The position numbers were made by a program, and so were the translations under genes. Of a DNA stretch of 64,000 bases, positions 3,350 to 64,000 are shown piece after piece. The stretch comes from Phyllobates terribilis (Eukaryota). Under the pieces are notes generated by a model. That model was not told where the DNA came from, searched no databases, and saw only the letters and a list, made by a program, of their open reading frames with translations. Position 1 is the stretch's first letter; each line of letters opens with the position of its first letter. The stretch is taken from assembly GCF_046119375.1 (NCBI RefSeq), contig NW_027362770.1:194680001-194744000 (forward strand). The letters run 5' to 3'.

Positions 3350-3970
<621 letters not shown>

Positions 3971-26265: not shown

Positions 26266-26266
26266 T

Positions 26267-40812: not shown

Positions 40813-40987
40813 ACTGTATCCCGTGCAGTTTGTGGCGTTACAATGTGTCAGTGCAGGTGATCCTGTGTCTGTCCTCATACAATCCCCCGTGGACATGTGT
40901 GCCCCTATACACTGTGGGGTAACATCAGCCCCATGTGAGGACATCCCCGAGATCAGCGGCGCCGGCTCTTGTGGTGACGGTGTGGGT

Positions 40988-41003
40988 GGCTCTTAGAAGA
41001 GCC
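40988..41003 (-). terminator. Histone mRNA 3' stem-loop (H2A copy 2)
   Basis: GGCTCTTCTAAGAGCC-ACCCA on minus. Confidence 0.95.
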
Positions 41004-41040
41004 TTTGGTTGTGTGGATGATACAGGATCGGCTGCAGCGC

Positions 41041-41589
<549 letters not shown>

Positions 41590-42135
41590 TCACCAATGAG
41601 CTGCAGGGGGCGGAGCTTAGTGCAGTTCCATTGGTCACATGAGTTTCTCACCCAATAGAAAACGTGATAATAATTGTATTAATAATTTTACTAATAATTC
41701 TATTCCGCTGTGGATTTTCTGGATGATTTTGTATATGAGGCACTTTCTCTCTTCTCGGGGATGGAGCTGCCCGGGGACTTGTTACATCCATCGCTCCCGA
41801 TCTGCACCAGTGACTCCATGAAGGGGGACAGGATCTGGGACTTGGAGCAGAAGAAAATGCTGAATATTCTGTTCTGTGTTCTGAATATGGTCATAAAGTT
41901 CTATTTACCCCAATATAATGCTAGAATTCATCTATATAGTGCAGTACACCCCTATATACCGCTGTGTGTGATGTGTGGAGTCCTCGTTCTCTATTATCCA
42001 CATGGACACAAGATTATCCCGGATGATTGGATCAGTATTAAATGTAGTAAATGTAATCAGTGCGGTAACTTTATTAATAATGACTGCGCTCCGGATAAGG
42101 AGAAACATTACAGGTGCTCAGTCCTGCACTAAGAT

Positions 42136-42756: not shown

Positions 42757-43349
42757 TATAGTATAATGCACTCCCCATAGTCCTACATCTAGTATAATGC
42801 ACTCCCCATAGTCCTCCATATAGCATAATGCACTCCCCATAGTCCTCCATATTGTATAATGCACTCCCCATAGTCCTCCATATTGTATAATGCACTCCCC
42901 ATAGTCCTCCATATTGTATAATGCACTCCCCATAGTCCTCCATATTGTATAATGCACTCCCCATAGTCCTCCATATTGTATAATGCACAGCCCATAGTCC
43001 TCCATCTAGTATAATGCACTCCCCATAGTCCTCCATATTGTATAAGGCACTCCCCATAGTCCTCTATATTGTATAATGCACTCCCCATAGTCCTCCATAT
43101 TGTATAATGCACTCCCCATAGTCCTCCATCTAGTATAATGCACTCCCCATAGTCCTCCATCTAGTATAATGCACACCCCATAGTACTCCATCTAGTATAA
43201 TGCACTCCCCATAGTCCTCCATCTAGTATAATGCACACCCCATAGTCCTCCATCTATTATAATGCACTCCCCATAGTCCTCCATACAGTATAATGCACTC
43301 CCCATAGTCCTCCATCTAGTATAATGCACTCCCCATAGTCCTCCATCTA
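42757..43349. repeat. 31-bp minisatellite, about 19 copies
   Basis: Mixed ATTG and CTAG variants. Confidence 0.93.
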
Positions 43350-44509
43350 CACTGCTCAAAAAATAAAGGGAACACTAAAATAACCCATCCTAGATCTGAA
43401 TGAATGAAATATTCTCATTGAATACTTTGTTCTGTACAAAGTTGAATGTGCTGACAACAAAATCACACAAACAAATCATCAATGGAAATCAAGTTTATTA
43501 ACCAGTGGAGGCCTGGATGTGGAGTCACCCCCAAAATTAAAGAGGAAAAACACACTACAGGCTGATCCAACTTTGATGTAATGTACTTAAAACAAGTCAA
43601 AATGAGGCTCAGTATTGTGTGTGGCCTCCACGAGCCTGTATGACCTCCCTACAACGCCTGGGCATACTCCTGTTGAGGCTGAGTATTGTGTGTGGCCTCC
43701 ACGTGCCTGTATGACCTCCCTACAACGCCTGGGCATGCTCCTGATGAGGCTGAGTATTGTGTGTGGCCTCCACGTGCCTGTATGACCTCCCTACAAAGCC
43801 TGGGCATGCTCCTGATGAGGCTGAGTATTGTGTGTGGCCTCCACGTGCCTGTATGACCTCCCAACAATGCCTGGGCATGCTACTGATGAGGCTCAGTATT
43901 GTGTGTGGCCTCCACGTGCCTGTATGACCTCTCTACAACGCCTGGGCATGCTCCTGATGAGGCTGAGTATTGTGTGTGGCCTCCACGTGCCTGTATGACC
44001 TCCCTACAATGCCTGGGCATGCTCCTGATGAGGCTGAGTATTGTGTGTGGCCTCCACGAGCCTGTATGACCTCCCTACAAAGCCTGGGCATGCTCCTGAT
44101 CAGGCTGAGTATTGTGTGTGGCCTCCACGTGCCTGTATGACCTCCCTACAACGCCTGGGCATGCTCCTGATGAGGCGGAGTATTGTGTGTGGCCTCCACG
44201 TGCCTGTATGACCTCCCTACAACGCCTGGGCATGCTCCTGATGAGGCTGAGTATTGTGTGTGGCCTCCACGTGCCTGTATGACCTCCCTACAACGCCTGG
44301 GCATGCTCCTGATGAGGCTGAGTATTGTGCGTGGCCTCCACGTGCCTGTATGACCTCAATACAACGCCTGGGCATGCTCCTGATGAGGCTGAGTATTGTG
44401 TGTGGCCTCCACGTGCCTGTATGACCTCCCTACAAAGCCTGGGCATGCTCCTGATGAGGTTGCGGATGGTCTCCTGTGGGATCTCCTCCCAGACCTGGAC
44501 TAAAGCATC
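43350..44509 (-). mobile_element. Tc1 3' fragment (third copy) with 12 x 71-bp repeat at 43604-44456
   Basis: Same TA junction and same Tc1-TTAT-hAT fusion as 37720-38737. Confidence 0.9.
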
Positions 44510-45945: not shown

Positions 45946-46663
45946 GTAGAGACCCATAACTTGTTATACAAAATACTTTTTCAAAAACCTTGCTTCAGTG
46001 TTGGCTCCAGCACAGAGCCTGCACTAAACCAGGCACATGTCAGCTGATCTATACAGCTGACATGTGCCCGCAACAGCCGCGGGTGGAATCGCGATCCACC
46101 CACGACTGCTAACTAGTTAGAGATTGACAGAGGCATTTAACTTGCGTAAACCTGATGCACATCAATTACCCTGTCCATCGGTCACCCCATCAAATGATCG
46201 CGGGTCACCGATGGGTTGGTATGACAACCCGGGGTCTGCAGGAGACCCCTGTGGTTATCATGGCCAAATTGCTATGAGCGCTGACCAGTGATCGGCGCTC
46301 ATAGTAAGTGAGCATTTCTGCTACAGAGAGGAGATCTGCTCATCGCTTCATTAACTCCCATGGAGATGATCAAAACAAGCAGAAAGTGTAAAAAAATGTT
46401 TTCAAAAATATTAAAAAAATAAAAAATATATAAAAGTTTAAATCACCCCCCTTTCGCCCCATTCAAAATATAACAAGAATCACACATACACATATTTGGT
46501 ATCGCTGCCTTCAGAATCGCCCCATCTATCAATATAAAAAAAAATTAATCTGATCGGTAAAAGGTGTAACAAGAAAAAATTCTAAACGCCAGAATTACGT
46601 TTCTGGTCACTGAAACCTTGCAATAAAATACATTAACGGGCGATCAAAACATCTACACCAAAA

Positions 46664-47489
46664 TCTATATATATATAATCGTCTTATCCCGTCTGTCTGT
46701 CCAGGAAATCCCGCGTCGCTCATTGGTCCGGCAGCGGCCAATCAGCGATGCGGCATTTCTGAAAAAAGATGGCGGCCGTTAGCGGCTCATCTGCGGGACG
46801 GAGCTCAGCGGCATTTCTGAAAAAAGATGGCGGCCGTTAGCGGCTCATCTGCGGGACGGAGCTCAGCGGCAATGCAGCCGGGAGATGACCGGCGCGAGGC
46901 GCTCATCTCCCGAACGCCAGCGACGCTGACCTCCATGTGGCTAGGGTGTCAAGGGAGGAACGGAGAGCGGCGCTGCGGGTCGGAATACTGCTGCTGCGAG
47001 CGCCCGCTCATGTCCCGGCACCTCGCAGCGGAAGTAGCCGTACAGGCAGCGGCGCTCCCCGGTCCTCACCAATACGATTCCGCTCCCCGATCCTCACCAA
47101 TACGATTCGCTGATTGGTCGCGGTCTCCGCACCCGACCAATCTGTGATCTTGGCGCAAAAGTTAAACACCGCTGTGCTGATTGGTCGCGGCTGCTGCCCG
47201 CGACCAATCACCGATTTGGGCGCCACATTTAAATAGCTGCCGCGACCAATCACCGATCTTGGCGCCACATTTAAACACTGCTGTGCTGATTGGTCGCGGC
47301 CGCTGCCCTCGACCAATTACCAATTTGGGCGCCACATTTAAATAGCGGCCGCGACCAATCACCGATCTTGGCGCCACATTTAAACACTGCTGTGCTGATT
47401 GGTCGTGGACGCTGCTCTGCTGATTGCGCCCGGTCGGCCGCATACATATTCTAGAATACCTGATGCGTTAGAATCGGGCCACCATCTAG
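46664..47489 (+). mobile_element. Non-autonomous Helitron (H6), paralog of H1 insertion
   Basis: Same A|T site as H1; longer through a 58-bp duplication and additional internal units. Confidence 0.88.
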
Positions 47490-48013
47490 TAGTATCAAGA
47501 AAAACGTCAGCTCGACACGCAAAAAAAAAAGCCCTCACCCGACCCCAGATCCTGAAAAATAGAGACTTTTTTTAAGCAAACTTTGGATCTTTTTTCACCA
47601 CTTAGATAAAAATATAACCTAGACATGTTTGGTGCCTACGAACTCGTAATGACCTGGAGAATAATAATGGCAGCTCAGTGTCAGCAATCAATGAACATGG
47701 TAAAAAAAAAAAAAAAAACTGTGTTTTTGCACTTTTTTTTGCAATTTCACCACACTTGAAATTTTTTCCCCGTTCTCCAGTACACGATATGGTAAAACCA
47801 GTGATGTTTACAACTTGTCCCGCAGAAAATAATCCCTCACACGGCCATATTCCAGTCCGGACGGCAGAGGCAGCCGAAGGGCTGAAATATTGGCACATGG
47901 GCCCCTCCATGACGTACCCCACCCCCTGCCACCGATATCTGCATCCATCCAAACAGCTGCGAATACATTGGTGGAGAGCCGGGCCGTATTGTGAGACAGC
48001 AGACGTGGTGACA

Positions 48014-48360
48014 TGTGGGGGGCTCATACTGTATATATGGAGGCTATGTGGGGGGCTCATACTGTATATATGGAGGCTATATGGGGGGCTCATACTGTAT
48101 ATATGGAGGCTATATGGGGGGCTCATACTGTATATATGGAGGCTATGTGGGGGGCTCACACTGTATATATGGAGGTTATGTGGGGGGCTCACTGTATATA
48201 TGGAGGCTATATGGGGGGCTCATACTGTATATATGGAGGCTATATGGGGGGCTCATACTGTATATATGGAGGTTGTGTGGGGGGCTCATACTGTACATAT
48301 GGAGGCTATATGGGGATCATACTGTATATATGGAGGCTATGTGGGGGGCTCACACTGTAC
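48014..48360. repeat. 33-bp minisatellite, about 10.5 copies
   Basis: Paralog of 2671-2950 with higher copy number. Confidence 0.9.
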
Positions 48361-48708
48361 ATCCTCCCGATACTCCAGAATCCGTTACATCAGTCTCCAC
48401 AGCGGAGAATTAGGAGCCGGAGTATCAGACACTAATGAGGGACATTTCCCGTGAACATCCGCCGACTCCTCTCCCCCCACACGGATGTGAGGATTTATGT
48501 GACCAAGCATTAACCCATTCATCTCCTCGCACTAGTATCCCGTGCAGTTTGTGGCGTTACAATGTGTTAGTGCAGGTAATCCTGTGTCTGTCCTCATACA
48601 ATCCCCCGTGGACATGTGTTCCCCCATACACTGTGTGGGGTAACATCAGCCCCATGAGAGGACACCCCCGAGATCAGCGGCGCCGGCTCTTGTGGTGACG
48701 GTGTGGGT

Positions 48709-48724
48709 GGCTCTTAGAAGAGCC
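48709..48724 (-). terminator. Histone mRNA 3' stem-loop (H2A copy 3)
   Basis: GGCTCTTCTAAGAGCC-ACCCA on minus. Confidence 0.95.
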
Positions 48725-48761
48725 TTTGGTTGTGTGGATGATACAGGATCGGCTGCAGCGC

Positions 48762-49310
<549 letters not shown>

Positions 49311-50956
49311 TCACCAATGAGCTGCAGGGGGCGGAGCTTAGCCAGTTCCATTGGTCACATGAGTTTCTCACCCAATAGAAAACGTGATAATAATTGTATT
49401 AATAATCTTACTAATAATTCTATTCCGCTGTGGATTTTCTGGATGATTTTGTATATGAGGCACTTTCTCTCTTCTCGGGGATGGAGCTGCCCGGGGACTT
49501 GTTACATCCATCGCTCCCGATCTGCACCAGTGACTCCATGAAGGGGGACAGGATCTGGGACTTGGAGCAGAAGAAAATGCTGAATATTCTGCTCTGTGTC
49601 AGGTTGTAGTTTGCACAGGATGAAGCAGCGAGACGTCGTTATAAGCGGAGAACTTCACTGGACGGAATCTTATCCCCAGGAATCCGCCTGCAGACAGTGA
49701 GGAGGCGCCGCCACCGATCACCTACAGCGTCCCCTATTGGTGGCCGGCTGCTCCTCACTACTACCCCCATCATCCGCCGCCTCCCCGGAGTCCTCGTCCT
49801 CTATAATCCACATGTGAAGGTGGATGAAGCCGATCACATCCCGCTCCTCCCCGCAGCCGGTATTATAGGAGCGGATACTGCGCCACTAATCCGGGGATCA
49901 GACCCCTGGGGGGGAGAAGAGCGGCCGCCGATCAATGAACACGAGCGGATCGTCCGATGTAATATCGCTGTTACACAGACAGTAAACTATCAGTCTAAGC
50001 GGGAAATTCAATTTAAGAGTTCAGCCAATCAGCACTTAGCACAAATCTATAGCTCCGCCCACAGGCGGCTCCAGGTTACAGCCACCATCTTTTAACCATT
50101 TAGTGTCTGATATTCTCGCTGCTGTTCTCCATTATCAATCATTTCCTCTTTACCAGTAACCGGATCAATCAGAGGAAAGGTCTAACAGAAACAAGTCACC
50201 AATTCTGCATTTATCACCCACTCCTGAGAAAAAATACTGATAGTGGGGCCGTGGCCTCACTAAAAGTGCTGGATATCCCCATATAGCGATGAGTCCAACA
50301 TAGTGCTCTTACCTACATATATTGCTGTATACCACCATATGGTGCTGAATGCCTCGATAGAGCGCATTATACACACCATGTAGTAATATATGCCGCCATA
50401 TAGTGCTGTAAATTCTATTTAAGGCTGTATATCTCCACATGCTGCAGTATTCCCCAGTATAGCGCTGTATCCATCAATATAGTGCTGTTCACCCCATATA
50501 CGGTTGTGTACACCCCAGATATTGCTGCGAACCCGACATCTGTATATAGCTGCTGTATTTGCCATACAGTGCTGGATACTGATTGTATAGCCATATAATG
50601 CTCCAAACACCCATATTGTGCTTTCAAATAGCACTGTGTATCTCCATATACGGTAATTCTATATACCCTTCGGTGCAATTCTCTCTTTGACGTCCTCTCT
50701 GTGACAACTGATCGTAGACGCCAGCGACCTCCTCCTCTGAGACCAGGACCGATCTAAAGATCAACACTTACATGATCTTCTGTTCCTTCTGGAGCTTTTC
50801 CTGTTCCGGTGTGCTGTAACACGGAAGGGATTGTTATTTCAGTGGGTTGTTTTTACCTTCTTACCCGTAAGGTGCAGTCCACCATTCTGCATCGTGGACC
50901 CCGGGTTCGGTTGCTTTCCATTATTTAATAAAGTTGTTTGCAACCATCCCCTTAGC

Positions 50957-50995: not shown

Positions 50996-51040
<45 letters not shown>
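50957..51040. repeat. (CA/TACA)-rich plus (TA)n microsatellite
   Basis: About 20 TA units ending at 51039, abutting the 3' end of H7. Confidence 0.9.
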
Positions 51041-51041
<1 letters not shown>

Positions 51042-51042
<1 letters not shown>

Positions 51043-53157
51043 TAGATGGAGGCCCGATTCTAATGCATCGGGTATTCTAGAGTATGTATGCGGCCGACCG
51101 GGCGCAATCAGCTTAGCGGTGTTTAAATTTGGCGCCAAAATCGCTGATTGGTCGAGGCCGGCAAAAGTGACCAATCACCAAAGCGGTGTTAAAATTTGGC
51201 GGCTATATCGCAGATTGGTCACGGCCGGCGGTCGCGACTAATCAGCAGAACGGGGTTTAAATTTGGCGCCAATAATGCTGATTGGTCACGGCCAGCGAAC
51301 GTGACCAATCAGCGGAGCGGGGTTTAAATTTTGTGGCAATAATGGTGATTGGTCACGGCCGCGACCATTTAGCAGAGCGGTGTTTACATTTTGCGGCAAT
51401 AATGCTGATTAGTCGCGGCCGGCAATTTGGCGTCAACAATGCTGATTAGTCGCGGCCGGCAACAGCGACCAATCAGCAGAGCGGGGTTTAAATTTGGCGC
51501 CAAAATTGCTGATTGGTGGCAGCCGGCGGTCGCGACCAATCAGCAGAGGGGGTTTAAATTTGTCGCCAATAATGCTGATTGGTCGCAATCGCCGGCCGCA
51601 ACCAATCAGCCGAGCAGGGTTTAAATTTGGCGCCAATACTGCTGATTGGTCATGACCGGCAACCGCGACCAATCAGCAGAGCGGGTTTTAAATTTGGCGC
51701 CAATAATGCTGATTAGTCGCGTCCGGCATTCGCGACCAATTAGCAGAGCGTTGTTTAAATTTGGCGCCAAGCTCGTTGATTGGTCGCGGACGCCAGCCGC
51801 GACCAATCATCACAGTAGTGTTTAAGTGTGGCGGCAAGATCGGTGATTGGTCGCGGCCGCTATTTAAATGTGGCGCCCAAATCGGTGATTGGTCGCCGGC
51901 AGTGGTCGCGACCTATCAGCAGAGCGGTGTTTAACTTTAGCGCCAAGATCACTGATTGGTCGCGTGCGGTGAGCGTGACCTATCAGCGAATCGTATTGGT
52001 GAGGAGCGGGGAGCGGAATCGTATTATTGAGGACCGGAGAGCACCGCTGCCTGTGCGGCTACTTCAGCTGCGAGAAGCCGGGAGTTGAGCGACTGCTCGC
52101 AGCAGAAGTGTCCCGACGCGCAGCGCCGCTCCCCGTTCCTCCCTTCACACCCTAGCCGCTGATGTCCCCACAGTATCCACATGGTGTTACAAAGGTCCGG
52201 ACATTTGTGTTAAAAATCGCTGATTGGTCGCCGGCGCTGCCCCCGACCAATCATCGATTTGGACGCCAAATTTAAATATCGGCCGCGACCAATCACCGAT
52301 CTTGGCTCCACATTTAAACACCGCTGTGCTGATTGGTCGCGGACGCTATTTAAATGTGGCGCCAAAATCAATGATTGGTCGCGCCCAGCGTCGGCGACCA
52401 ATCAGCACAGCGGCGTTTAAATTTGCCGCCCATCTCGCTGATTGCTCGCGGTGGCCGGCCGCGATTAATCAGCAGAGCGGCGTTTAAATTTGCCGCCCAT
52501 CTCGCTGATTGGTCACGGCCGCCCACCGTGACCAATCAGCACAGCGGCGTTTAAATTTTTCGCCCATCTCGCTGATTGGTCGCGGTCGGCCACCGCGACC
52601 AATCAGCAGAGCGGCGTTTAAATTTGCCGCCCATCTCGCTGATTGGTCGCGGCCGGCCACCGCGACCAATCAGCGTCGTATTAGTGTGGGCCCGGGAGCG
52701 GCGCTGCTTGTGCGGCTCCGTATTAGCGAGGACCGGGGAGCGGCGCTGCCTGTGCGGCTCCTTCTGCTGCGAGAAACCGGGAGATGAGCGGCTACTCGCA
52801 GCAGAAGCATCCCGACCGGCGGCGCCGCTCCCCGGTCCTCCGTTCACACTTGCTGTCGGGAGATCAGCGGGCCATGCCGCTGATCTTCCGACGTTAGCCG
52901 CATGGAGGTCAGCGGCGCCGGTCGGGGTAGTAGTGCTGCTAGCGCTGTTCATCTCCCCGCTGCATCGCCGCTGAGCTCCGTCCCGCAGATGAGCCGCTAA
53001 CGGCCGCCATCTTTTTTCAGATATCCCGCGGCGCTGATTGGCCACTGCCAGACCAATGAGCGACGCGGGATTTCCTGGACAGACAGATAGACAGAAAGAC
53101 AGACAGACAGAAAGACAGACAGACAGACAGACGGGATAAGACAATTATATATATAGA
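51042..53157 (-). mobile_element. Non-autonomous Helitron (H7)
   Basis: CTAG at 51042-51045 with hairpin; TCTATATATA 5' end at 53157. Confidence 0.9.
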
Positions 53158-53165
53158 TATATATA

Positions 53166-56100
53166 CTAGATGGTGGCCCGATTCTAATGCATCGGGTATT
53201 CTAGAATTTGCATGCGGCTGACCGGGCGCCACTAAGCAGCGAAGCAGTGTGTAAATGGGTTGTGCACTACTTTTAATTAACTTCACAATGTATCCCCTCG
53301 GGGCCCCTAATGAATTTTGTCATCACGTCATGTTGTCAATCCTGCTTGTGACAACATCGCTGACGACGCACAGCCAGCACGTAATTCTCCCGACTGCAGC
53401 AGGATCTTGCTTCCGTTTACATCACCACTATTTGCGGCTGCAGCCGGGGGTCTGCTGTTCCCCGCACCACAGTGAATGACGGGCTCTGGCCGGGGTTATC
53501 CCCCATCGTGTCACATCCAGCATCCACAGCGCGGTCTGTCAATGTGGTTTGTATGGCTGCGTCATTCCTCTAATCCTGGTTTGTATGGCTGACTTATTTT
53601 GGATTGTACGCCTTCCTCATCTTAGCTTGTATGGCCCCCTTATCCTGGTTTTGTATGACCTTCTCATTCCCCCATCTCTACAGCACAGTTCAAAAACTAA
53701 ACCCTAATCCTCCCCTTGTTTCCTTTTCTCTGCTCCAGCGCTGTCTGTCCTGTTTTCAGCAGCTCCTCGCAGGGTGTGAGGCACAGCACGCGCTCTCAGA
53801 TACTGCTGTGATTAGCTGCTGTCTGTCCTGTTTTCAGCAGCTCCTCGCAGGGTGTGAGGCACAGCACGCGCTCTCAGATACTGCTGTGATTAGCTGCTGT
53901 CTGTAGATTCGCTGCTTTCACGCCGGCACTAAGTGCAGGAGAGGCACAAATCTGCATTCACTTTAGTAGCAGATGCTGCAGATGTCGCTATGAAGATTTA
54001 ACAATAATACAATGAATACACAGAATAATACTTTATTAACTATTATTGGTTATAGAACTTAATACAACTGAACAAAATTATTAAACAGATGATCAAAATA
54101 TATAAACTATTCCATGAATATGTAACAATATTTTACAATAAATCATCGGACAAAAGAAGTACGACCCTAGAATTTATTTCTTAACAATATCAACCTAAAA
54201 TATTTTTGTACACAACATTTTTGGTGACTACTTTTGGACTATCTGTAAGCAACTTTCCTTGTAAATGGGTATCCAAAACTTGCACCTTGACATTGAATCT
54301 CATTTTAACTCTTGAAAATGCAACATAGAGTTGTCCATGTCCAAAAACGGGCTCCGGTAAATATATGCCAACACGGTGTAGAGTTTGACCTTGTGACTTG
54401 TTTATTGTCATGGCAAATGCTGGTTTTACTGGAAACTGTCGACGTCGAAGCCTAAATGGAAGACCGGTGTCTGAAGGACATAAATCAATGCGTGGAATGA
54501 ACACTTCGTCTCCTTTTGCAGATCCAGTGATCACTCTTGATTGAATTATGTGGGAATGGAGTCCAGTAACAATAAGGCGAGTTCCATTACATTGACCATT
54601 TCTTGTATTTAGATTCCGAAGCAACATTACGATTGCTCCAACTTTAAGTTGTAGTCTGTGGGATGGCATTCCTGATGGCGTAACACTATTTAAATTTCAA
54701 CTGGATAATGCTCTCGTTCATCTTCATTGTCGACATCCACTGAATCATCACTTTTGTACAATTTATACTCTCCAGGCATTCTATCCATCACACGGGAATT
54801 TAGCAGAGCTACGTCATCGTTCTTGGGACAGAGAATTGCATAGGAAGAGGCCCTCTCAACACTGCTTTGGTCGCTCACATCTATTTCAACGCGTTGTCCA
54901 AAAACATCACTTACGATGCAGTCAGTGCACAACATGTCTTCTGGTATTTCAATAATGTCTTCTCCAAGGTTATATTCATTGCTAAGTTCACCATTACCAA
55001 GTTTAAGAAGCCAGTTGCTGTACTCTGGGTCAGAAGATCGCATGTTGTTAATTAGTTGTAGTTTATTAAAATCTTTCCAAAGGTCTGACATTTTTAAGGT
55101 TGACTCGATAATATTTGTTCTTGTTCCATTCGGTACAACTGGAAGGCATTGCCTAAAATCTCCGCCAAGGACAAAAACTTTACCTCCAAAAGGAATTTCA
55201 TTTTTTTCTGCAATATTTGCAGTCATAACTTCACGCAGAAGTCTGTCAATTAAGCTCAAAGCATATTTGGGTGCCATGGTGCACTCATCAAGTATCAAAA
55301 GATTTGCACTGTTTAACTGTTTTCCTGCAAATGTGTCTTGTTTTATTCTGGAAACGGAGATTTCATTGACTGGAACCGGTATCCCAAAGAGTGAATGCAT
55401 AGTGCGACCTCCTCTTAAAAGGTTTGCTGCAATACCTGTTGTAGCCGATGGCAGTACGACTTTTCCTAACCCTCTAACGTGATGCATTAAAACTTCATAG
55501 AGGTATGTTTTACCGCTGCCTCCAGGACCGTCAATAAAGAAACATTTTGGCGTTGGATCGGCTTGGTTTTCTTCAGCGCTCACAATAGTGTCATATGCAA
55601 TCCATTTTTGTTGATTTAAGGAGTTTTTCTACTCTCTTGCCAACAATAATTCATAAGCTTCGTCATACTCTTGAATTTGTGCAACTTGACTTGCAGGTTG
55701 TGTCAAATTAAAGTCTGAAAACGTTTTTCCATCCAGTAGTAGGACATTTTGGACATCTTGCATGGCATAACATTCGCAATTGTGACAATTTCCACTTTAG
55801 TTGTGAAGACGTAAGCAGTAATCTTCAATTAAATGTTCTTTGAAATTTGTCCAAAGTTGAGCCGGATTTGTAGGCGGTCCAAAGACACAAATATAGGCAA
55901 ACAATTCACGAAGTTTCTTAGGCATACGTAGGGTAACTACATACATATGCATTGCATTTGGCTATCTGGGTTAGTACAAACTTTATTGTTATTGCACCTT
56001 CTGTCTCTGTTTACCATATTTACTTATTCATGATGTAGCACTTTTTATTTCTATTCTTTGAGTCCATCATTAGCACTATGCACTTTATTGTGGACTTCAT

Positions 56101-59100
56101 TTAAACACAGGTATCATACATATTGTTCTATTTGGTATATAGTGATTGAGTATATAATGTATCAATCATATTCCATGTATTGTCCTAGCCAGTAACCTTT
56201 TCATTGTGTTATCCTTTCCCTATTTATCCTTCCATGTATATTTTATCATATCTATTCAATAAACATTATCGATTTTAATAATGTAGTTGATGTGTCACAT
56301 ATGTAGGTTGTCTCTAATATAGACACATTTACGCCTGAGCATATTTGAATATAGTCCTTAGATATGTAGGGTATCTGCGTCTTCTAAAGTAAACGTCCAC
56401 ATAGTATCATCCAATAGAAGTCCTAATGCCAAAGCTGCAGCTTTAAATGTTTCGTGCAATCTCCATTAACTGTTTTCAAATCTTCGTAACTTCTAGCTCC
56501 TTTGACATGCAGTAGTAACAGCCGAAAGCAATATCTTTGTTGATCCTTGACACTAACAGTATACATGCATCCAATTATTCTGCTAAGTCCTCATTGTCTT
56601 GGCTTCCAAGTTTTATTCCAAACGTGATGCTCTGGAATCTCTCGATACAAATACTGCCTTGCGTTTTCGTCACGTTGGTTCAGCAAAAAACATTCCATTA
56701 ATGTTGACGTTGTGCTTAAATTTTTTGAGACATCTTCGACTTGAGCATTTTCAAAGAAATAAAGCTGCTGTTGATTTGGTAAATGAATAGCTAAACGTAT
56801 AATGGCATGGGACTGTGAATGCATTGGAAGCGCAAATATTCTCCAAGCAGCTTCTGGAGCACTGACATATCTTGAGTCAACAAACCGTGATGATTCATCG
56901 TGATTGACTGTTTTTTGTTGTATTTCGACGTTAGCTTTGTCATGCCCCTTGTAGATGTACTTGAAAAGATATTTAACACTTTTTATTGAAGCGTAGATTT
57001 CAACGTTGATGTGACAGTTGTAGCGTTTTAATAAGTACGGGTTGTATGGAACTATCCATGAGTTATTTATAATCTTTTTATTGTGTACAATATTATCAAT
57101 CAGTTGTCTCTGGTAGGATGGGTAGCCGTCCAAATCTTTAACAATGTGCTGTTTCAACTGCTTTGGAAACCCTTTTGTACACTTTCCATTTTCCATGCAT
57201 GGACTTTTTGGATTTGCTACACCGTATGGACCATGAACCATATTACAGATTACAATATTATACAGCTCAGGATACTTTTTCTTGGTTAGGAATTTCAGCC
57301 CACACTATGTTGTCAATTTCATCCTCCGTGCGAAACTTGGAATCCGCGTCTAAAATAATTAGTATATGCGCATGTGGGAGACCTCGTTTCTGAAACTCTA
57401 TGACATGTACCATTGCTATGACTGTTCCAAAATGCCCATTTTTGATGTCTTTAAAAAGGCTGCTGAGTTTTAGTCGAAATACGCGTGCAACTAAGTCCGG
57501 CCTGTGTTCAACTTGCTGCCAGGGTTGTAGATTTTCTGTAATTTCCGGCCATTTAGGATTACAGGTTATTGTTAAAAAAATGTCAGGTCTTCCATACTTT
57601 GTTACTATTGCCATTGCATCTTGATAACGCTGTTGCATGTTGCGGGGGCTACCTTCAAAGGACGACGGGAGAATTACTGTTTTTCCAATTGGAATTCCTT
57701 TTTGAATGGATTGTTTTAGCAAATGTTCTCGAAGAATGCAGTAGTCTTCAACTTTAAGTTGTTTTTGGTTCATTCGTATTAAATTGAGCCGATTAGCTTC
57801 AATTTTAACGTATGCGTCGACTAAGTACTGTTGTGTCAGTTTCCCACCGTTTAAAATAGGATTGAAGTAATTTCGCACAGACAGAAGAAAACTGAAGTAC
57901 TGTAGTTGTGTAATTCTTCTTGAATTTCCTTGCTGGTGTAGGTTTTCATGCCACCCTTGATCACTGCTTGGAAAGAATAGCGGATACAGAAGAGCATCAA
58001 GGTTGCTGTGCAAAATGCTAATACGTTGTGTTTTAGGAACGAAAGGGTTGTTTTTGTCTGGCTTAAGATGGACTAATATATCTCTTTGAAAAGGAGGCTC
58101 TCCATCATCGTTTTGAAAAACAACTGCGACCTCACTTACACGTGGTTTGTTGTAACATCGGGGATCTTGTTGACGTTCTAGAAGGCATTTCCGTTCCATT
58201 TTGTATAGCTCTCTGTTCCTCCTCAGCTTCGACGTCTTTTAGCATGCGATATGCGGCATCAAATGGGCTGATTGTTTGTAAATGTACGGCAATTATGTTC
58301 ATCAGTTCTGCATTACACTTTTCATTTTCTTTTCGGTTCATCCTTTGTTCTGTAGCCTCATTTGGATCAAAGATGTATAATTGTGCAAATGTTGGTGGTT
58401 GTCCTAGCTCTGGGTGAAGTGTTCCAGTGCGGTGGTAGATCTGGCCATGAATTTTAAAACAATACGGTCCGAATCCAGGGGGTGGTGCAATGTTGGCACC
58501 AAGTGAAGCAAACGCATGAGAACTGTTGATACTTCTGATATTTTCCATAAAATTTATACTGTGTTCATGTGTTCCTTTCATCAACTGCTCAAACAGATCT
58601 GAGTAGTGACATCTGGGTAGCATAACTTTTCCTTTTTGGCAGCACTTAGTAAACTGATTGTCGGATGTTTTTTCCTCGATGAAATTCAAAGAGTCGCATT
58701 TTGAACAAACTACATTCATCTTCCCACAGTAGTGTTGAATAATTATAGTTTCACTGTCTGTTACATAACGTGCAAGTTGTTGAATGTTCTGCTGGGTTTG
58801 CCTTAGTTGGTAGAGCATTCGTTTTTGATAAATCTGTCGATCGTGTTGTTCTCGGTTTGTCCTGGATTCTGGAGATTCATTCAGCCGACATTGTCTATGG
58901 TATTCCGCATCGTGTTCCTGTCTAGCCGCAGTGTGTTGCGGTCTTTCCCGTTCCCGACATTGTCTGTGAGATTCTGCATCCTGGGCTTGTCTGGCGACAG
59001 TGTGTTGTGGTGTCTCCTGTTCCCGACATTTTCTGTGAGATTCCGCATCCTGGGCTTGTCTGCCGGCAATGTGTTGTGGTGTCTCCTGGTCCCGAAGTTT

Positions 59101-61690
59101 TCTGTGAGCTTCCGCATCCTGGGCTTGTCTACTGGCAGTGTGTCGTGGTGTCTCCTGTTGCCGAATTTTTCTGTGAGCTTCCGCATCCTGGGCTTGTCTG
59201 GCGGCAGTGTGTGGTGTTGATTCCTGCTTCCGAAGTTTTTAGTGAGCTTCCGCATCCTGGGCTTGTCTGCCCGCAGTGTGTTGTGGTGTCTCCTGTTCCC
59301 GACGTTTTTGGTGAGATTCCGCATCCTGGGCTTGTCTGGCGGCAATGTGTTGCGGTGTCTCCTGTCCCGGTGTTTTTGGCGATATTCTGCATCCTTGGCT
59401 TGTCTGGCGGCAGTGTGTTGCGGTGTCTCCTGTTCCCGGCGTTTTTGTTGAGACTCTGCATCGTGGGCTTGTCTTGCGGCAGTGTGTTGCGGTGTCTCTT
59501 GTTCCCGGCGTTTTTTGTGAGATTCCGCATCCTGGGCTTGTCTGGCGGCAGTGTGTTGCGGTGTCTCCTGTTCTCGGCGTTTTTTGTGAGATTCCGCATC
59601 CTGGGCTTGTCTGGCGGCAGTGTGTTGTGGTGTCTCCTGTTTCCTGCGTTTTTTGTGAGATTCCGCATCCTGGGCTTGTCTTTCGGTAGTGTGTTGCGGT
59701 GTCTCCCGTTTCCGACATTGTCTGTGAGCTTCTGCATCCTGGGCTTGTCTGGCGGCAGTATGTTGTGGTGTCTGTTGCTCTCGACGTTGTCGTTTTCTTG
59801 CTGCTTCTGCTGCTTTTCTGTCTTCCTCCGTGGCGTATTTTCGCTTACGACCCATTATAAAACAGGAAGCGTAAAGAAGTATCTCTTCAGCGCGCTGTCA
59901 CTGGCAGAGCGTGTTCAGTAAACCTGACAGAAGTCCATCGCACAGTGTGACAGAAGTCCATCGCACAGTGTGACAGAAGTCCCTCGCACAGTGTAACAGA
60001 GAAAACCTGCACAGTACGTTATGAGCAGTTTGTGAGTCACATGACCACATGGGCGGAGTTAGGCCTGCCTTCTCCCGAAGGTGGCGTAGCTATTTGAAAT
60101 GTTGCGGTAATTGGCCAGAGAGCGTGTTTAAATTTGGCGTGAAAATCTGTGATTGCTCGCGGGCGGCGTCTGCGACAAATCATAGAAGCGGGTTTTAAAT
60201 CTCGCGCACCGTGTTACTAAGGAGCGGACAGCATGTTTGAATTTAGCGTTAAAATCTCTGATTGGTCGTGGCAGGAGGGCGCGACCAATCAGCAAATCGT
60301 ATTGGTGAGGACCGGGGAGCGGCTGCCTGTGCGGTTACTTCCGCTGCGAGAAGCCGGGAGATGAGCGACTGCTCGCAGCAGAAGTATCCAGATCCGCAGC
60401 GCCGCTCCCCGGTCCTCCCTTGACACGCTAGCCGCTGATCTCCCGACAGTAGTCGCATGGTGTTACTAAGGACCGGACATTTGTGTCCAAAATCGCTGAT
60501 TGGTCGCGGGCGCTGCCCGATTACCGATTTAGGCGCCACGTTTAAATAGTGGCCGCGACCAATCACCGATCTTGGCGCCACATTTAAACACTGCTGTGCT
60601 GATTGGTCGCGAACGCTGCCTGCGACCAATCACCGATTTGGGAGCCACATTTAAATAGCGGGCGCGACCAATCACCGATCTTGGCGCCACATTTAAATAC
60701 TGCTGTGCTGATTGGTAGCGGACGCTGCCCGCGACCAATCACTGATTTGGGCGCCACATTTAAATAGCGGCCGTGACCAATCACCGCTCTTGCAGACACA
60801 TTTAAACACCACTGTGCTGATTGGTCGCGGACGCTGCCCGCGACCAATCACCGATTTGGGCGCCACATTTAAATAGCGGCCGCTACCAATCACCAATCTT
60901 GCAGACACATTTAAACACCTCTGTGCTGATGGGTCGCGGACGCTGCCCGCGACCAATCACCGTTTTGTGCGCCACATTTAAATAGCGACCGCGACCAATC
61001 ACCGATCTTGCAGACACATTTAAACACCGCTGTGCTGATTGTTCGCGGACGCTGCCCTCGACCAATCACCGATTTGGGCGCCACATTTAAATAGCGTCCA
61101 CGACCAATCAGCACAGCGGTGTTTAAATGTGTCTGCAAGATCGGTGATTGGTCGTGGCCGCTATTTAAATGTGGCTCCCAAATCGGTGATTGGTCACGGG
61201 CAGCGTCCGCAACCAATCAGCACAGCGGTGTTTAACTTTTGCGGCAAGATCATTGATTGGTCGCGGCCGGAGACCACGACCAATCATCGAATCGTATTGG
61301 TGAGGACCGGTGAGGGGAATCGTATTGGTGAGGACCTGGGAGCGTCGCTGCCTGTGCGGCTACTTCCGCTGTGAGAAGCCGAGAGATGAGCGGCTGCTCG
61401 CAGCAGAAGTATCCTGACCCGCAGCGCCGCTCCCCGGTCTTCCTTGACACCCTAGCCGCATGGAGGTCAGCGGCGTCGGCGGACGGGGTCCTTCTGCTGC
61501 TACGGATCGGGAGATGAGCGCCTCGCGCCGGTCATCTCCCGGCTGCATGTCCGTCCCGCAGATGAGCCGCTAACGGCCGCCATCTTTTTTCAGAAATCCC
61601 GCGCTGCTGATTCGCCGCTGCCGGACCAATGAGCGACGCGGGATTTACTGGACAGACAGACAGATGGGATAAGACAATTATGTATATAGA
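53166..61690 (-). mobile_element. Full-length autonomous-type Helitron (H8), 8.5 kb, coding region disrupted
   Basis: 5' TCTATATACA at 61690, CCAAT-array region about 60100-61600, RepHel remnant, 3' hairpin CCCGAT...ATCGGG plus CTAG at 53166-53169; termini shared with the short copies. Confidence 0.93.
54190..59855 (-). pseudogene. Helitron RepHel (23-aa repeats, Cys region, HUH Rep, Pif1-family helicase) with multiple frameshifts, stops and an insert
   Basis: Rep motifs FLTITCNPKW, EFQKRGLPHAHIL, YLFKYIYK; helicase GPGGSGKT, LILDE, GGDFRQCLPV, LKVGAIVMLLRNL, FAMTINKSQGQT, HGQLYVAFSRV. Confidence 0.95.
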
Positions 61691-63783
61691 CTAGATGGTG
61701 GCCCGATTCTAACGCATCGGGTATTCTAGAATATGTATGCGGCCGACCGGGCGCAAGCAGCAGAGCGGTGTTTACATTTGGCGCCAAAATCGCTGATTGC
61801 TCGAGGCCAGCAACCGCGACCAATCAGCAAAGCGGTGTTAAAATTTGGCGCCTATATCGCAGATTGGTCACGGCCGGCGGTCGCGACTAATCAGCAAAGC
61901 GGGGTTTAAATTTGGCGCCAATAATGCTGATTGGTCGTGGCCAGCGAACGGGACCCATCAGCAGAGCGGGGTTTAAATTTGGCAGCAATAATGCTGATTG
62001 TTTGCGGCCGGCGTTCGCGACCAATCAGCAGAGCGGTATTTAAATTTGGCGCAAATAATGGTGATTGGTCACGGCCGCGACCAATCAGCAGAGCGGTGTT
62101 TAAATTTGTCGCCAATAATGCTGGTTATTCGTGACCGGTAACCGCGACCAATGAGCAGAGCGGTGTTTAAATATGGCGCCAATATCGCTGATTGGTTGCG
62201 GACGGCCACCGAGACCAATCAGCAGAGCGTTGTTTAAATTTGGCGCCAATCTCGCTGATTGGTCGCGGCTGGCGTCCGCGACCAATCAGCAGAGCGGTGT
62301 TTTAAATTGCCACCAAAATCGCTTATTGGTCGGGGCCGGCCACCGCGACGAATCAGCAGAGCGGGGTTTAAATTTGCCGCCGCCCATATCGATGATTGGT
62401 CGGGGCCGGCGGCCGCCACCAATCAGCGTCGTATTAGTGAGGACCGGGGAGCGGCGCTGCCTGTGCTGGTACTTCCGCTGCGAGCAGCTGGGAGATGAGC
62501 GGCTGCTCGCAGCAGAAGCATCCCGACTGGCGGCGAAGCTCCTCGGTTCTCCGTTCACACTTGCCGTCAGGAGATCATAGCGCTGTTTAAATTAGGCGCC
62601 AATCTCGCTGATTGGTCGCGGTCGGTTGGCGGCCGCGACCAATCAGCAGAGCGTTGTTTAAATTTGGCGCTAATCTTGCTGATTGGTCGCGGTCGGCTGT
62701 CATCCGCGACCAATCAGCAGAGCGTTGTTTAAATTTGGCGACAATCTCGCTGATTGGTTGCATCTGGCGTCCGCGACCAATCAGCAGAGCGTTGTTTAAA
62801 TTTGGCGCCAAGCTCGCTGATTGGTCACGGCTGGCGTCCGCGACCAATCAGCAGAGCATTGTTTAAATTTGGTGTCAAGCTCACTGATTGGTTGCGGCTG
62901 GCGTCCGCGACCAATCAGCACAGCAGTGTTTAAATGTGGCGGCAAGATCGGTGATTGGTCGCGGGCGATATTTAAATGTGGCGGCCAAATCGGTGATTGG
63001 TCGCGGGCAGCGTCAGCGACCAATCAGCGATTTTTAACACAAATGTCCGGATCTTTGTAACACCATGCGGATACTGTGGGGACATCAGCGGCTAGGGTGT
63101 GAAGGGAGGACCAGGGAGCGGCGCTGCGGGTTGGGATACTTCTGCTGCGAGCGCCCGCTCATGTCCCGGGTTCTCGCAGCGGAAGTATCCACACAGGCAG
63201 CGCTGCTGATATCCATGCGGCTAGGGTGTGAAGGGAGGACCGGGGAGCGGCGCTGACATCCAATTGGTCGCGGCCGCTATTTAAATGTGCCGCACAAATT
63301 GGTGATTGGTCGCGGTCTTGGCCCGCGACCAATCACTGATCTTGCCGCAAAAGTGGCCCGCGACCAATCACCGATTTGGGCGCCAAATTTAAATATCGTC
63401 CGCGACCAATCACCGATCTTGGCTCCACATTTAAACACAGCTGTGCTGATTGGTCGTGGACGCTATTTAAATGTGATGACAAAATCGGTGATTGGTCACG
63501 CCCAGCGTCGGCGACCAATCAGCACAGCGGTGTTTAAATGTGGAGCCAAGATCGGCAATTGGTAGCGGCCGATATTTAAATTTGCCGCCCAAATCGGTGA
63601 TTGGTCGCGGGCACCGTCCGCGACCAATCAGCAAAGTAGTGTTTAACTTTTGCGTTAAGATCAGTGATTGGTCGGGTCCGAAGACCGCGACCAATCATCG
63701 AATCGTCTTGTTGAGGACCGGGGAGCGGCGCTGCTTGGGCGGGTACTTCCGCAGCGAGAACCCGGGACATGAGCAGGCGCTCG
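61691..63783 (-). mobile_element. Helitron (H9), 3' part; 5' end interrupted or outside the window
   Basis: CTAG at 61691-61694 with hairpin, CCAAT arrays; homology stops at about 63783. Confidence 0.85.
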
Positions 63784-64000
63784 TGACGCGCCCCCCGGGC
63801 CCGTGCCGCGCGGGGGGATGCCCGGACCCGGGCCTTCTGTAAGATGCTGGGGGCTGTAGTCTCCGTGTGGCGGCGACCCGGCCCGCGCCCAGGGCGGTCA
63901 AACCAGTGGCAGTCCCGATGTATAGCAAATGTCCGACCACGCCACCCATGGATCGCGGTCAGCGGGAACCGCCGCCGCGCTGCAGACCGCCGAGGCCGAT

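What the first reader, a model, noticed from the sequence alone, without database searches (positions are those of the whole stretch)
59990..61690. Helitron internal VNTR is an array of cell-cycle-promoter modules (NF-Y CCAAT plus CDE-N4-CHR) upstream of RepHel
Seen: the roughly 67-bp internal units of this Helitron family contain GACCAATCAG/C and its inverse, plus TGGCGC-CACA-TTTAAA or TGGCGC-CAAA-TTTAAA (e.g. 60573-60588, 9551-9566). TTTGGCGC is frequent. Canonical TTTGAA occurs at 60093 and 60236, and a GC box at about 60051, just upstream of the RepHel ATG (59855). Known: RRCCAATSRG is the NF-Y consensus. A GC-rich CDE, a 4-nt spacer and a CHR (TTTGAA or TTTAAA), with several CCAAT boxes about 30-33 bp apart, is the DREAM/MMB-MuvB architecture of G2/M genes (CDC25C: TGGCGG-AAGG-TTTGAA), and TTTSSCGC is the E2F site. 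One unit checked has same-strand CCAAT spacings of 31 and 36 bp (8843, 8874, 8910). Inference: the element carries a multimerised cell-cycle or A-MYB/MuvB germline promoter that times RepHel expression, and its short copies spread dozens of such modules around histone genes. Caveat: the units descend from each other, so repetition is not independent evidence.
Basis: partly seen in the sequence, partly recalled or inferred. Interest (0 to 1): 0.82.

Follow-up and report, generated by a model that had tools for sequence, protein, structure and literature searches.

The report
Helitron leader array of CCAAT boxes
A rolling-circle transposon (Helitron) carries, between its 5' end and its broken transposase gene, a tandem array of short units that each match NF-Y (CCAAT) binding sites very well; it may be the element's promoter or enhancer, but the proposed cell-cycle (DREAM/CHR) control is not supported by anything testable here.

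Summary
Window 53166-61690 (minus strand) is one 8.5-kb autonomous-type Helitron. These units carry inverted GACCAATCA boxes, TTTAAA and GGCGCC.

Counts in 59990-61690 against shuffles:
- CCAAT: 28 vs 4.2.
- TTTAAA: 15 vs 0.24.
- TTTSSCGC (strict E2F): 0.
- TTTGAA and the GC box: chance level.

Box spacing is 24/42/43 bp, not 31-33.

Among 47+16 aligned units, the CCAAT boxes and TTTAAA vary 3-6 times less than spacers. Private (recent) mutations hit motifs and spacers alike, so the boxes were kept while the array was built and now decay.

This RepHel copy is dead, with at least 5 frameshifts. RNA-library contigs carry unbroken variants at three of those breaks, and they extend at least 283 nt upstream of the ATG. 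RepHel relatives (67-71% identity) have no such array.

Best reading: a lineage-specific minisatellite grown from the element's 5' CCAAT palindrome, probably NF-Y-bound. The closest analogue is the LTR12 U3 repeats. DREAM/CHR timing is unproven.

This scan had already noted the family on other DNA (s1-234818, s1-209068).

The parts
53166..61690 (-). Whole autonomous-type Helitron copy (8,525 bp), 5'-TC...CTAG-3'
   Evidence: Family 5' motif at 61675-61690 and 3' hairpin+CTAG at 53166-53205 are the first termini on either side of RepHel. 72 DNA contigs diverge at the neighbouring terminus, 61690/61691.
61675..61690 (-). 5' terminus TCTATATACATAATTG, abutting the CTAG of the next copy (head-to-tail junction)
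61594..61646 (-). 5' subterminal palindrome (AAATCCCGCG...CGCGGGATTT) with an inverted CCAAT/ATTGG pair. It is present in all 7 copies of the window and is the probable ancestor of the repeat unit.
   Evidence: Alignment A1; ssDNA fold -18.8 kcal/mol, z -4.1
61576..61586 (-). AAGATGGCGGC, exact YY1-type core (named from my own knowledge of the consensus)
   Evidence: 1 match vs 0.00 expected
61291..61575 (-). GC-rich non-array segment with GCGGAAGTA (ETS-like) at 61361-61369; a second copy of the segment lies at 60295-60494
60495..61290 (.). The VNTR: 109-bp units (60495-61110) plus an inverted block (61093-61269). 60877-61269 is its own reverse complement at 83%.
60116..60294 (-). Decayed units nearest RepHel (CCAAT changed to GCAAT, TTTAAA changed to TTCAAA, which is the 'TTTGAA' at 60236)
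59856..60115 (-). Leader specific to the autonomous form, with 23-bp repeats at 59925-60015. Contains the GC box (60051) and TTTGAA (60093). Covered by RNA-library contigs.
   Evidence: No other copy in the window; RNA contigs 59724-60138 (records 16, 24, 32)
54196..59855 (-). RepHel pseudogene: STPR-like repeats, Helitron_like_N, PIF1 helicase; at least 5 frameshifts
   Evidence: Pfam; tblastn frames -2/-1/-2/-3/-2/-1
58902..59788 (-). 69-bp tandem array encoding about 13 repeats of 23 aa (Glu1, Thr2, Arg9: STPR-type DNA-binding repeats)
   Evidence: PMC4856987
53166..53205 (-). 3' terminus: hairpin CCCGAT/ATCGGG, then CCACCATCTAG
61691..64000 (-). 3' part of the next, non-autonomous copy (67-mer arrays with TTTGGCGCC), head-to-tail with the element above

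Best explanation
SHOWN. The interval is the 5' leader of an 8.5-kb autonomous-type Helitron (53166-61690, minus strand). The element's RepHel gene starts at 59855 and is broken in this copy. The leader is mostly a minisatellite of 109-bp (67+42) units. Each unit carries two or three full-consensus NF-Y boxes (GACCAATCA, forming inverted pairs), one or two TTTAAA and a GGCGCC core. The units resemble the CCAAT palindrome that every copy has about 50-100 bp from its 5' end. The same 1.5-kb array region, but only about 40-60 bp of the 3' end, is shared with the many non-autonomous copies.

INFERRED. The array grew by tandem duplication of the 5' palindrome in this frog-type lineage. In live copies it serves as a CpG-rich, orientation-independent NF-Y platform, acting as a promoter or enhancer or as a nucleosome-clearing site for RepHel transcription, in the way the NF-Y repeats of the ERV9/LTR12 U3 region work. 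Boxes 24-43 bp apart would let several NF-Y trimers bind at once. TTTAAA could be a CHR, but it could equally be a TATA-like box: TATTTAAA occurs on the RepHel-sense strand once per 109-bp unit, 42-43 bp downstream of a box. Cell-cycle gating through DREAM/MuvB is only a possibility (about 0.1). Genomic copies, including this one, are no longer under constraint.
For: Structure:
- Pfam Helitron_like_N, PIF1 and Pif1_2B on the minus strand.
- Termini mapped.
- The 3' terminus beside 61690 has 72 DNA contigs with unlike flanks.
- The N-terminus is homologous from Met1 to P0008.

Motifs: RRCCAATSRG 8 vs 0.07, CCAAT 28 vs 4.2, TTTAAA 15 vs 0.24. Also an exact YY1-type core, two GCGGAAGTA, and CpG o/e 1.1-1.3 over the leader vs 0.64-0.8 elsewhere.

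Constraint, variant frequency at non-CpG positions:
- 47 67-mers: spacer 0.21, NF-Y box 0.057, TTTAAA 0.032 (permutation p<5e-5). Shared variant alleles are enriched in spacers (p=0.006).
- 16 109-mers: spacer 0.062, NF-Y box 0.014, TTTAAA 0.010 (p=0.057).

Hairpin selection is not seen: real neighbouring arms are no more complementary than re-paired arms (p=0.23 and 0.39).

Expression:
- RNA-library contigs over RepHel are long and single-variant.
- They differ from the window by indels at three of the places where the window's frame breaks. Those variants make up 4% or less of DNA depth, so this is not DNA carry-over.
- Contigs at the same depth reach 60138, so any start site lies at least 283 nt upstream of the ATG, in or beyond array-derived sequence.

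Precedent:
- LTR12 U3 has 5-17 repeats of about 41 nt with conserved, validated NF-Y sites (PMC11853044).
- Double NF-Y binding needs at least 19 bp, and a 43-bp class of double CCAAT exists (PMC4889920).
Against: - No start site, strand information or protein binding could be obtained. Contigs are unstranded and one search found no clusters of read starts.
- The RNA/DNA depth ratio is flat (0.002-0.006) from RepHel through the arrays. It rises only over the 5'-terminal 350 bp (0.01-0.02).
- RNA libraries hold a smaller share of leader words than of RepHel words (0.085/0.33 vs 0.26/0.47).
- RepHel relatives at 67-71% identity have AT-rich leaders with no CCAAT array, so the array is not needed for RepHel expression in general.
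- Non-autonomous copies, which need no promoter, consist mostly of the array.
- Private mutations are not depleted in motifs (p=0.84), and CpG transitions run 3-6 times other transitions, so the copies decay as silent, methylated DNA would.
- The units nearest the ATG are the most decayed.
- The blocks occur in both orientations.
- All units descend from one another, so the motif counts amount to one observation.
Confidence: 0.42

Rival explanations
1. Neutral minisatellite. The units are only by-products of slippage or unequal exchange at a palindrome near the 5' end. They are carried along because rolling-circle transposition starts at that end. The promoter-like motifs are inherited from one ancestral palindrome (or a once-captured host promoter) and do nothing now.
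For: - Helitrons and Helentrons commonly carry internal minisatellites, e.g. the Heli2Xen 166-bp arrays (PMC12001565) and the oyster Helentron satellites.
- Copy number and period vary among copies.
- Private mutations are unbiased.
- 20-25% of the boxes in the older 67-mer arrays have lost the pentamer.
- CpG decay is present.
- Relatives lack arrays.
Against: Unit subtypes differ mainly in the spacers, while the boxes and TTTAAA stay nearly invariant (p<5e-5 and p=0.006). Pure neutrality does not predict this. TTTAAA lies outside the palindrome arms yet is the best-kept element.
Confidence: 0.28
2. Cis-acting transposition sequence. The inverted boxes form hairpins in the single-stranded rolling-circle intermediate, or they are repeated binding sites for RepHel, like the subterminal transposase-binding repeats of Ac/Ds or En/Spm. 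Either way they raise the mobilisation of copies that carry many units.
For: - Non-autonomous copies keep about 1.5 kb of the array region but only about 40-60 bp of the 3' end.
- The units fold well as ssDNA (z -3.0 to -4.8).
- 60877-61269 is a roughly 390-bp self-complementary block.
- The palindrome sits beside the 5' terminus in every copy.
- RepHel carries about 13 STPR-type DNA-binding repeats.
Against: - Adjacent arms show no excess complementarity over shuffled partners, and only one compensatory pair was seen among about 19 mutated boxes.
- STPR domains prefer AT-rich DNA at 4 bp per repeat (PMC4856987). That fits the TA-rich termini rather than the GC-rich units.
- STPR-bearing relatives have no arrays.
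- As far as I know, no Helitron is reported to need internal hairpins.
Confidence: 0.18
3. The units are CCAAT + CDE-N4-CHR modules bound by NF-Y and DREAM/MMB (or A-MYB/MuvB). They restrict RepHel expression to G2/M or to the germline.
For: - TTTAAA is a validated CHR that binds DREAM as well as TTTGAA does, and CHRs work in both orientations (PMC4176359).
- SGCGS-N4-TTTRAA occurs 6 times vs 0.01 expected.
- TTTAAA is the most conserved hexamer of the unit.
- A different frog Helitron (Heli1Xen1) has a myb ChIP peak at its 5' end (PMC12001565).
- Mouse RLTR10B combines NF-Y and A-MYB sites (PMC12065363).
Against: - CHRs act on or very close to the start site, and only 23% have a CDE (PMC4176359). 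Here the sites are multimerised over 1 kb, 270-1310 bp from the ATG.
- Box spacing is 24/42/43 bp, not about 33 (PMC3287175).
- The GC-rich element is as variable as the spacers in the 109-mers (0.091 vs 0.062) and is replaced by TGCAGAC in about half of this array's modules.
- There are no strict E2F sites in the interval.
- TTTAAA also reads as part of TATTTAAA.
Confidence: 0.1

Closest known systems
ERV9/LTR12 U3 enhancer repeats (human)
   Same: A transposable element whose regulatory region is a variable-number tandem array (5-17 units of about 41 nt). Each unit has a conserved CCAAT box. The boxes are bound by NF-Y and are active in germline and progenitor cells (PMC11853044, PMC12065363).
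   Different: LTR12 is a retroviral LTR with a mapped start site at U3/R and validated binding. Here the carrier is a DNA rolling-circle transposon, the boxes form inverted pairs, the units are 67/109 bp, and no binding or start site is known. In mammals, NF-Y-bound TEs reported so far are all LTRs (PMC12065363).
Helitron/Helentron internal minisatellites (Heli2Xen 166-bp arrays in Xenopus; oyster Helentron satellites)
   Same: Tandem arrays inside the element. They dominate the non-autonomous copies and vary in copy number (PMC12001565; PMC7492417 listed).
   Different: Those arrays are not described as transcription-factor site multimers. Here the unit derives from a 5' subterminal CCAAT palindrome, and the family has canonical Helitron1-type ends.
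CCAAT + CDE/CHR promoters of G2/M genes (CCNB2, CDC25C, CDK1)
   Same: NF-Y boxes together with TTTAAA/TTTGAA and a GC-rich element 4 nt away (PMC3287175, PMC4176359).
   Different: In those genes there is a single CHR at the start site and the CCAAT boxes are about 33 bp apart. Here there are many copies far from the ATG, the spacing is 24/42/43 bp, and the GC element is not conserved.
Tandem-monomer promoters of LINEs (mouse L1 monomers)
   Same: The 5' region of an autonomous element is built of tandem units that carry factor sites. A YY1-type core is also present here at 61576-61586. This comparison rests on my own knowledge of mouse L1.
   Different: L1 monomers each start transcription and belong to a retrotransposon. 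Nothing here shows initiation within the units.

Membership tests
Canonical Helitron (HLE1) | RepHel protein with a HUH Rep domain plus a PIF1-type helicase | tested here: met
   PF14214 2.9e-60, PF05970 2.5e-54, PF21530 1.4e-16. Collinear with a 1479-aa RepHel over residues 1-1477, but with at least 5 frameshifts.
Canonical Helitron (HLE1) | 5'-TC and 3'-CTRR ends, with a short hairpin about 10 nt before the 3' end | tested here: met
   TCTATATAC... at 61690. CCCGAT/ATCGGG hairpin, then CCACCATCTAG, at 53166-53205. The same ends occur in 8 further copies.
Canonical Helitron (HLE1) | Insertion between host A and T with unrelated flanks | tested here: inconclusive
   This copy is flanked head-to-tail by other copies. 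At the neighbouring 3' end, 72 DNA contigs diverge into unlike AT-rich flanks.
NF-Y-bound TE repeat enhancer (LTR12-like) | Tandem units each carrying a consensus CCAAT box (RRCCAATSRG) | tested here: met
   8 strict and 28 core matches in 1.7 kb vs 0.07 and 4.2 expected.
NF-Y-bound TE repeat enhancer (LTR12-like) | CCAAT conserved among unit subtypes | tested here: met
   Variant frequency 0.057 and 0.014 in boxes vs 0.21 and 0.062 in spacers. Recent private mutations are not depleted in the boxes.
NF-Y-bound TE repeat enhancer (LTR12-like) | Box spacing that allows co-occupancy (at least 19 bp) | tested here: met
   24/42/43 bp; the threshold is from PMC4889920.
NF-Y-bound TE repeat enhancer (LTR12-like) | NF-Y occupancy and CCAAT-dependent activity | not testable with these tools
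   No ChIP or reporter data are available.
CDE/CHR (DREAM/MMB) cell-cycle promoter | CHR hexamer TTTGAA/TTTAAA/TTCGAA | tested here: met
   TTTAAA 15 vs 0.24 expected. TTTGAA 2 vs 0.9 (not significant). TTCGAA 0.
CDE/CHR (DREAM/MMB) cell-cycle promoter | CHR located on or very near the transcription start site | tested here: inconclusive
   No start site is known. The sites lie 270-1310 bp upstream of the ATG, and RNA contigs reach 60138.
CDE/CHR (DREAM/MMB) cell-cycle promoter | CCAAT boxes about 33 bp apart upstream of the CHR | tested here: not met
   Spacings in 60495-61290 are 24, 42 and 43 bp. 31/36 bp occurs only in the 67-mer type of other copies, via a weak third CCAAT.
CDE/CHR (DREAM/MMB) cell-cycle promoter | Conserved GC-rich CDE 4 nt from the CHR (optional: found in 23% of CHR genes) | tested here: inconclusive
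   Present in some modules (6 matches). It is as variable as the spacers and is replaced by TGCAGAC in about half of this array.
CDE/CHR (DREAM/MMB) cell-cycle promoter | LIN54/E2F4/B-MYB binding and cell-cycle-dependent expression | not testable with these tools
   Needs wet-lab data.
E2F site | TTTSSCGC | tested here: not met
   0 matches in 59990-61690. The window's 55 matches lie mostly in 67-mer arrays of other copies.
Helitron-borne minisatellite | Tandem array between the termini, variable in copy number, dominant in non-autonomous copies | tested here: met

The most novel reading that the evidence does not exclude
A vertebrate Helitron lineage that is still transcribed has turned its 5' subterminal palindrome into a multimerised NF-Y (plus CHR/E2F-like) promoter. 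This promoter couples transposase expression to proliferating or germline cells, where replication supplies the single-stranded DNA that rolling-circle transposition needs. The family's thousands of short copies then seed the genome with NF-Y/MuvB-responsive modules.
Probability: 0.1. Interest if true: 0.8.

Novelty: new variant of a known kind. Interest (0 to 1): 0.45.

Why it matters
Very little is known about how Helitrons drive and time transposase expression. TE-borne NF-Y arrays are so far documented for retroviral LTRs only. If these units bind NF-Y, this family would be a DNA-transposon counterpart of LTR12: a mobile, high-copy source of pioneer-factor sites in a large amphibian-type genome. 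It would also give a concrete promoter to test for a Helitron that appears to be transcribed from copies whose frame is unbroken where this one breaks. If the units do not bind, this is one more Helitron minisatellite whose motif content misleads.

Tried and rejected
1. Start-site mapping by RNA reads. The single read-laying run returned unstranded Logan contigs only, with no start clusters, so no TSS could be placed.

2. Depth ratios as a proxy for expression. The ratio is flat between RepHel and the arrays, and summed word depth is a poor measure. I use only the variant-specific argument at the frame breaks.

3. Comparative test on relatives. The relatives that could be read (L001-L003, 67-71%) come from an AT-rich genome and have no arrays, so motif and spacer conservation across lineages could not be tested.

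4. Hairpin covariation. There is no signal, but there is little variation to work with.

5. STPR domain as the array binder. I consider this unlikely because STPR prefers AT-rich DNA (PMC4856987).

6. Rfam scan of the window. Nothing reached gathering score.

7. PWM scans (NFYA/LIN54/E2F4). Not run because no matrices were available offline. IUPAC consensus strings were used instead.

8. CpG preservation as a sign of hypomethylation. CpG o/e is high (1.1-1.3), but CpG transitions are still 3-6 times other transitions, so the result is ambiguous.
Full report
**1. What is there**

The interval 59990-61690 contains a 109-bp tandem array (60495-61110, 5.7 copies, 90% matches) and an inverted continuation (61093-61269). 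It is flanked by GC-rich non-array segments and, towards lower coordinates, by decayed units (60116-60294). The 109-bp unit is a 67-bp unit plus a 42-bp partial duplicate.

Motif counts in the interval, against 1000 dinucleotide shuffles:

| Motif | Observed | Expected |
|---|---|---|
| RRCCAATSRG | 8 | 0.07 |
| CCAAT | 28 | 4.2 |
| TTTAAA | 15 | 0.24 |
| GGCGCC | 6 | 1.1 |
| SGCGS-N4-TTTRAA | 6 | 0.01 |
| TTTSSCGC | 0 | 0.57 |
| TTTGAA | 2 | 0.9 |
| GGGCGG | 2 | 1.5 |

In the whole window RRCCAATSRG occurs 126 times vs 3.1 expected. TTTSSCGC occurs 55 times vs 8.5 expected, mostly in the 67-mer arrays of other copies. The excess is real, but it comes from copying one unit.

**2. The element**

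Pfam places Helitron_like_N, PIF1 and Pif1_2B on the minus strand between 54190 and 58199. The family's 5' motif and its 3' hairpin+CTAG were mapped across the window. The first 5' end upstream of RepHel is at 61690 and the first 3' end downstream is at 53166. This gives one 8,525-bp element.

It sits head-to-tail between two non-autonomous copies (51040-53157 and 61691 to beyond 64000). At 61690/61691 the CTAG of one copy directly abuts the TC of the next. In a DNA run, 72 contigs diverge into unlike flanks exactly there, so this is a genuine terminus.

About 1.5 kb of the leader (60116-61690) recurs in the other eight or so copies of the window. Of the 3' side, no stretch of 150 bp or more is shared; only the terminal hairpin motif recurs.

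The ATG at 59855 is the true start. MGRKRKYATEE... aligns from residue 1 with P0008, a 1479-aa RepHel that is 71% identical in Rep. The following 69-bp DNA array (58902-59788) encodes 23-residue repeats with the STPR hallmarks Glu1, Thr2 and Arg9 (PMC4856987). P0008's N-terminus hits Pfam STPRs at 6e-12. STPR domains in Helitron transposases are already reported (PMC11417382).

A tblastn of P0008 and P0007 shows the whole protein is present, but in frames -2/-1/-2/-3/-2/-1. This copy is a pseudogene.

**3. Is the unit constrained?**

I aligned arrays to their unit by wrap-around global alignment, without anchoring on motifs. This gave 47 67-mers from seven arrays and 16 complete 109-mers. Variant frequency at non-CpG positions:

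| Unit set | Spacers | NF-Y 10-mers | TTTAAA | GGCGCC element | Permutation p |
|---|---|---|---|---|---|
| 67-mers (n=47) | 0.21 | 0.057 | 0.032 | 0.104 | <5e-5 |
| 109-mers (n=16) | 0.062 | 0.014 | 0.010 | 0.091 | 0.057 |

Variant alleles shared by two or more units are concentrated in spacers (p=0.006). Singletons, which are the recent private mutations, are not depleted in motifs (p=0.84).

CpG transitions run 3-6 times other transitions. About a fifth of the boxes in the older arrays have lost the pentamer.

So the boxes and TTTAAA were kept while the unit types diversified and amplified, and the present genomic copies decay freely. The GC-rich 'CDE/E2F' part is not specially kept. In this very array about half of the modules read TGCAGAC instead of TGGCGCC.

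**4. Hairpin or protein site?**

Every copy has a roughly 50-nt palindrome near its 5' end, containing an ATTGG/CCAAT pair. The array unit looks like an expanded version of it. This agrees with an earlier follow-up in this scan (s1-234818).

Units fold well as single-stranded DNA (z -3.0 to -4.8). However, real neighbouring arms are no more complementary than randomly re-paired arms (p=0.23 and 0.39). Only one compensated pair was seen among about 19 mutated boxes. TTTAAA, the best-kept element, lies outside the arms. This mildly favours a sequence-specific reader over pairing, but the power of the test is low.

**5. Expression**

Three RNA libraries of the same organism hold 24-29% of the RepHel words. 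Their contigs over RepHel are 200-924 nt long and single-variant, at depth about 20. The DNA run gives contigs of only 104-162 nt for the same region.

The window's frame breaks near 58178, 57276 and 56460. At all three places the RNA contigs differ from the window by indels, at about 100% of RNA depth. In DNA those variants are 4% or less of depth (table 4).

The RNA signal therefore does not mirror the genomic copy population. It is not DNA carry-over, and it comes from a minority of copies that are unbroken at these places. Contigs at the same depth cover 59724-60138. Any start site therefore lies at least 283 nt upstream of the ATG, and the GC box (60051) and TTTGAA (60093) are inside transcribed sequence.

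Beyond 60138 the high-copy background hides the signal:
- The RNA/DNA depth ratio is 0.002-0.006 throughout and 0.01-0.02 only over 61396-61750.
- RNA libraries hold relatively fewer leader words than RepHel words.
- No strand information or start clusters were available.

**6. Comparison with what is known**

For CHR elements, Müller et al. (PMC4176359, PMC3287175) report the following:
- TTTAAA is a functional CHR.
- Either orientation works.
- Only 23% of CHR genes have a CDE.
- The CHR sits on or very near the start site.
- CCAAT boxes lie about 33 bp apart.

Here the spacing is 24/42/43 bp. The elements are multimerised far from the ATG and the GC element is not conserved. The membership test for a CDE/CHR promoter therefore fails on spacing and cannot be decided on position.

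TTTAAA also reads as TATTTAAA on the RepHel-sense strand once per 109-bp unit, 42-43 bp downstream of a box. That is a classical CCAAT/TATA geometry (my own inference).

The closest functional analogue is the U3 region of ERV9/LTR12. It has 5-17 tandem units of about 41 nt with conserved, validated NF-Y sites (PMC11853044). NF-Y-bound TEs in mammals are all LTRs (PMC12065363). Double NF-Y binding needs at least 19 bp, and a 43-bp class of double CCAAT exists (PMC4889920).

Helitron minisatellites as such are known (PMC12001565). In Xenopus Heli1Xen1, which has different termini, myb and foxn4 ChIP peaks sit at the 5' end.

RepHel relatives at 67-71% identity (L001-L003) have AT-rich leaders and no CCAAT arrays. 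The array is therefore a lineage-specific gain.

**7. Histone context**

Three H2A genes (3350-3856, 41041-41547, 48762-49268, all minus strand) are present. The block 46001-49957 is a 97-98.6% duplicate of 853-4545, and it includes both the short Helitron and H2A. These neighbourhoods are copies of one block, not repeated targeting.

**8. Verdict**

| Reading | Probability |
|---|---|
| NF-Y platform (promoter, enhancer or chromatin opener) | about 0.4 |
| Neutral minisatellite | about 0.3 |
| Cis-acting transposition element | about 0.2 |
| Full DREAM/MuvB cell-cycle model | about 0.1 |

The same family and idea were already noted several times in this scan. Two earlier follow-ups (s1-234818, s1-209068) reached compatible conclusions on non-autonomous copies.

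This window adds:
- the link to an autonomous-type copy;
- the confirmed start codon;
- the STPR N-terminus;
- the absence of arrays in relatives;
- evidence that the family is transcribed from copies unbroken at the places where this one is broken.

Noticed in passing
window 58902-59788 (minus): The RepHel N-terminus is encoded by a 69-bp DNA tandem array giving about 13 repeats of 23 aa with Glu1/Thr2/Arg9. These are STPR-type DNA-binding repeats. Relatives encode theirs by 69/138-bp arrays too (L001 6135-6965, L002 7377-7907). The window copy itself gets no Pfam hit.
   Followed up: partly
window 61690/61691 and 53157-53166: Three Helitron copies lie head-to-tail. At one junction CTAG abuts TC directly; at the other the ends are separated by 8 bp of TATATATA. 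This is either nested insertion at the A|T of a resident 5' junction or rolling-circle read-through.
   Followed up: partly
window 56300-58200 vs RNA runs X9-X11: RNA-library contigs carry indel variants at three of the places where this RepHel copy changes frame. Those variants are rare (4% or less) in the DNA run. The family seems to be transcribed from a few copies that are unbroken there.
   Followed up: partly
window 61396-61750: The RNA/DNA word-depth ratio is 4-8 times higher over the 5'-terminal 350 bp (YY1-type core, CCAAT palindrome, (GACA)n, neighbouring 3' hairpin) than over the arrays or RepHel. Cause unknown.
   Followed up: no
window 853-4545, 40395-41879, 46001-49957: A segmental repeat (97-98.6% identity) carries an H2A gene (a 168-aa ORF including an upstream extension), a 33-bp minisatellite and, in two of the three copies, a short Helitron. 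No Rfam histone stem-loop reached gathering score.
   Followed up: partly
window 7244-7910, 14180-16203, 37314-37719, 42757-43346; 11643-12923, 37968-38683, 43602-44459: 31-bp and 71-bp minisatellites recur directly beside Helitron 3' ends (e.g. 37313/37314 and 42756/42757). They may be part of a larger composite repeat.
   Followed up: no
window 60877-61269: A roughly 390-bp stretch of the array is its own reverse complement at 83% identity, i.e. a long inverted duplication inside the VNTR.
   Followed up: no
window 27697-31571: A CR1-type LINE with a GDSL/esterase-like ORF1 and an endonuclease-RT ORF2, preceded by a 127-bp tandem array (26265-27617). A Tc1-like transposase remnant lies at 13047-13874.
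   Followed up: no
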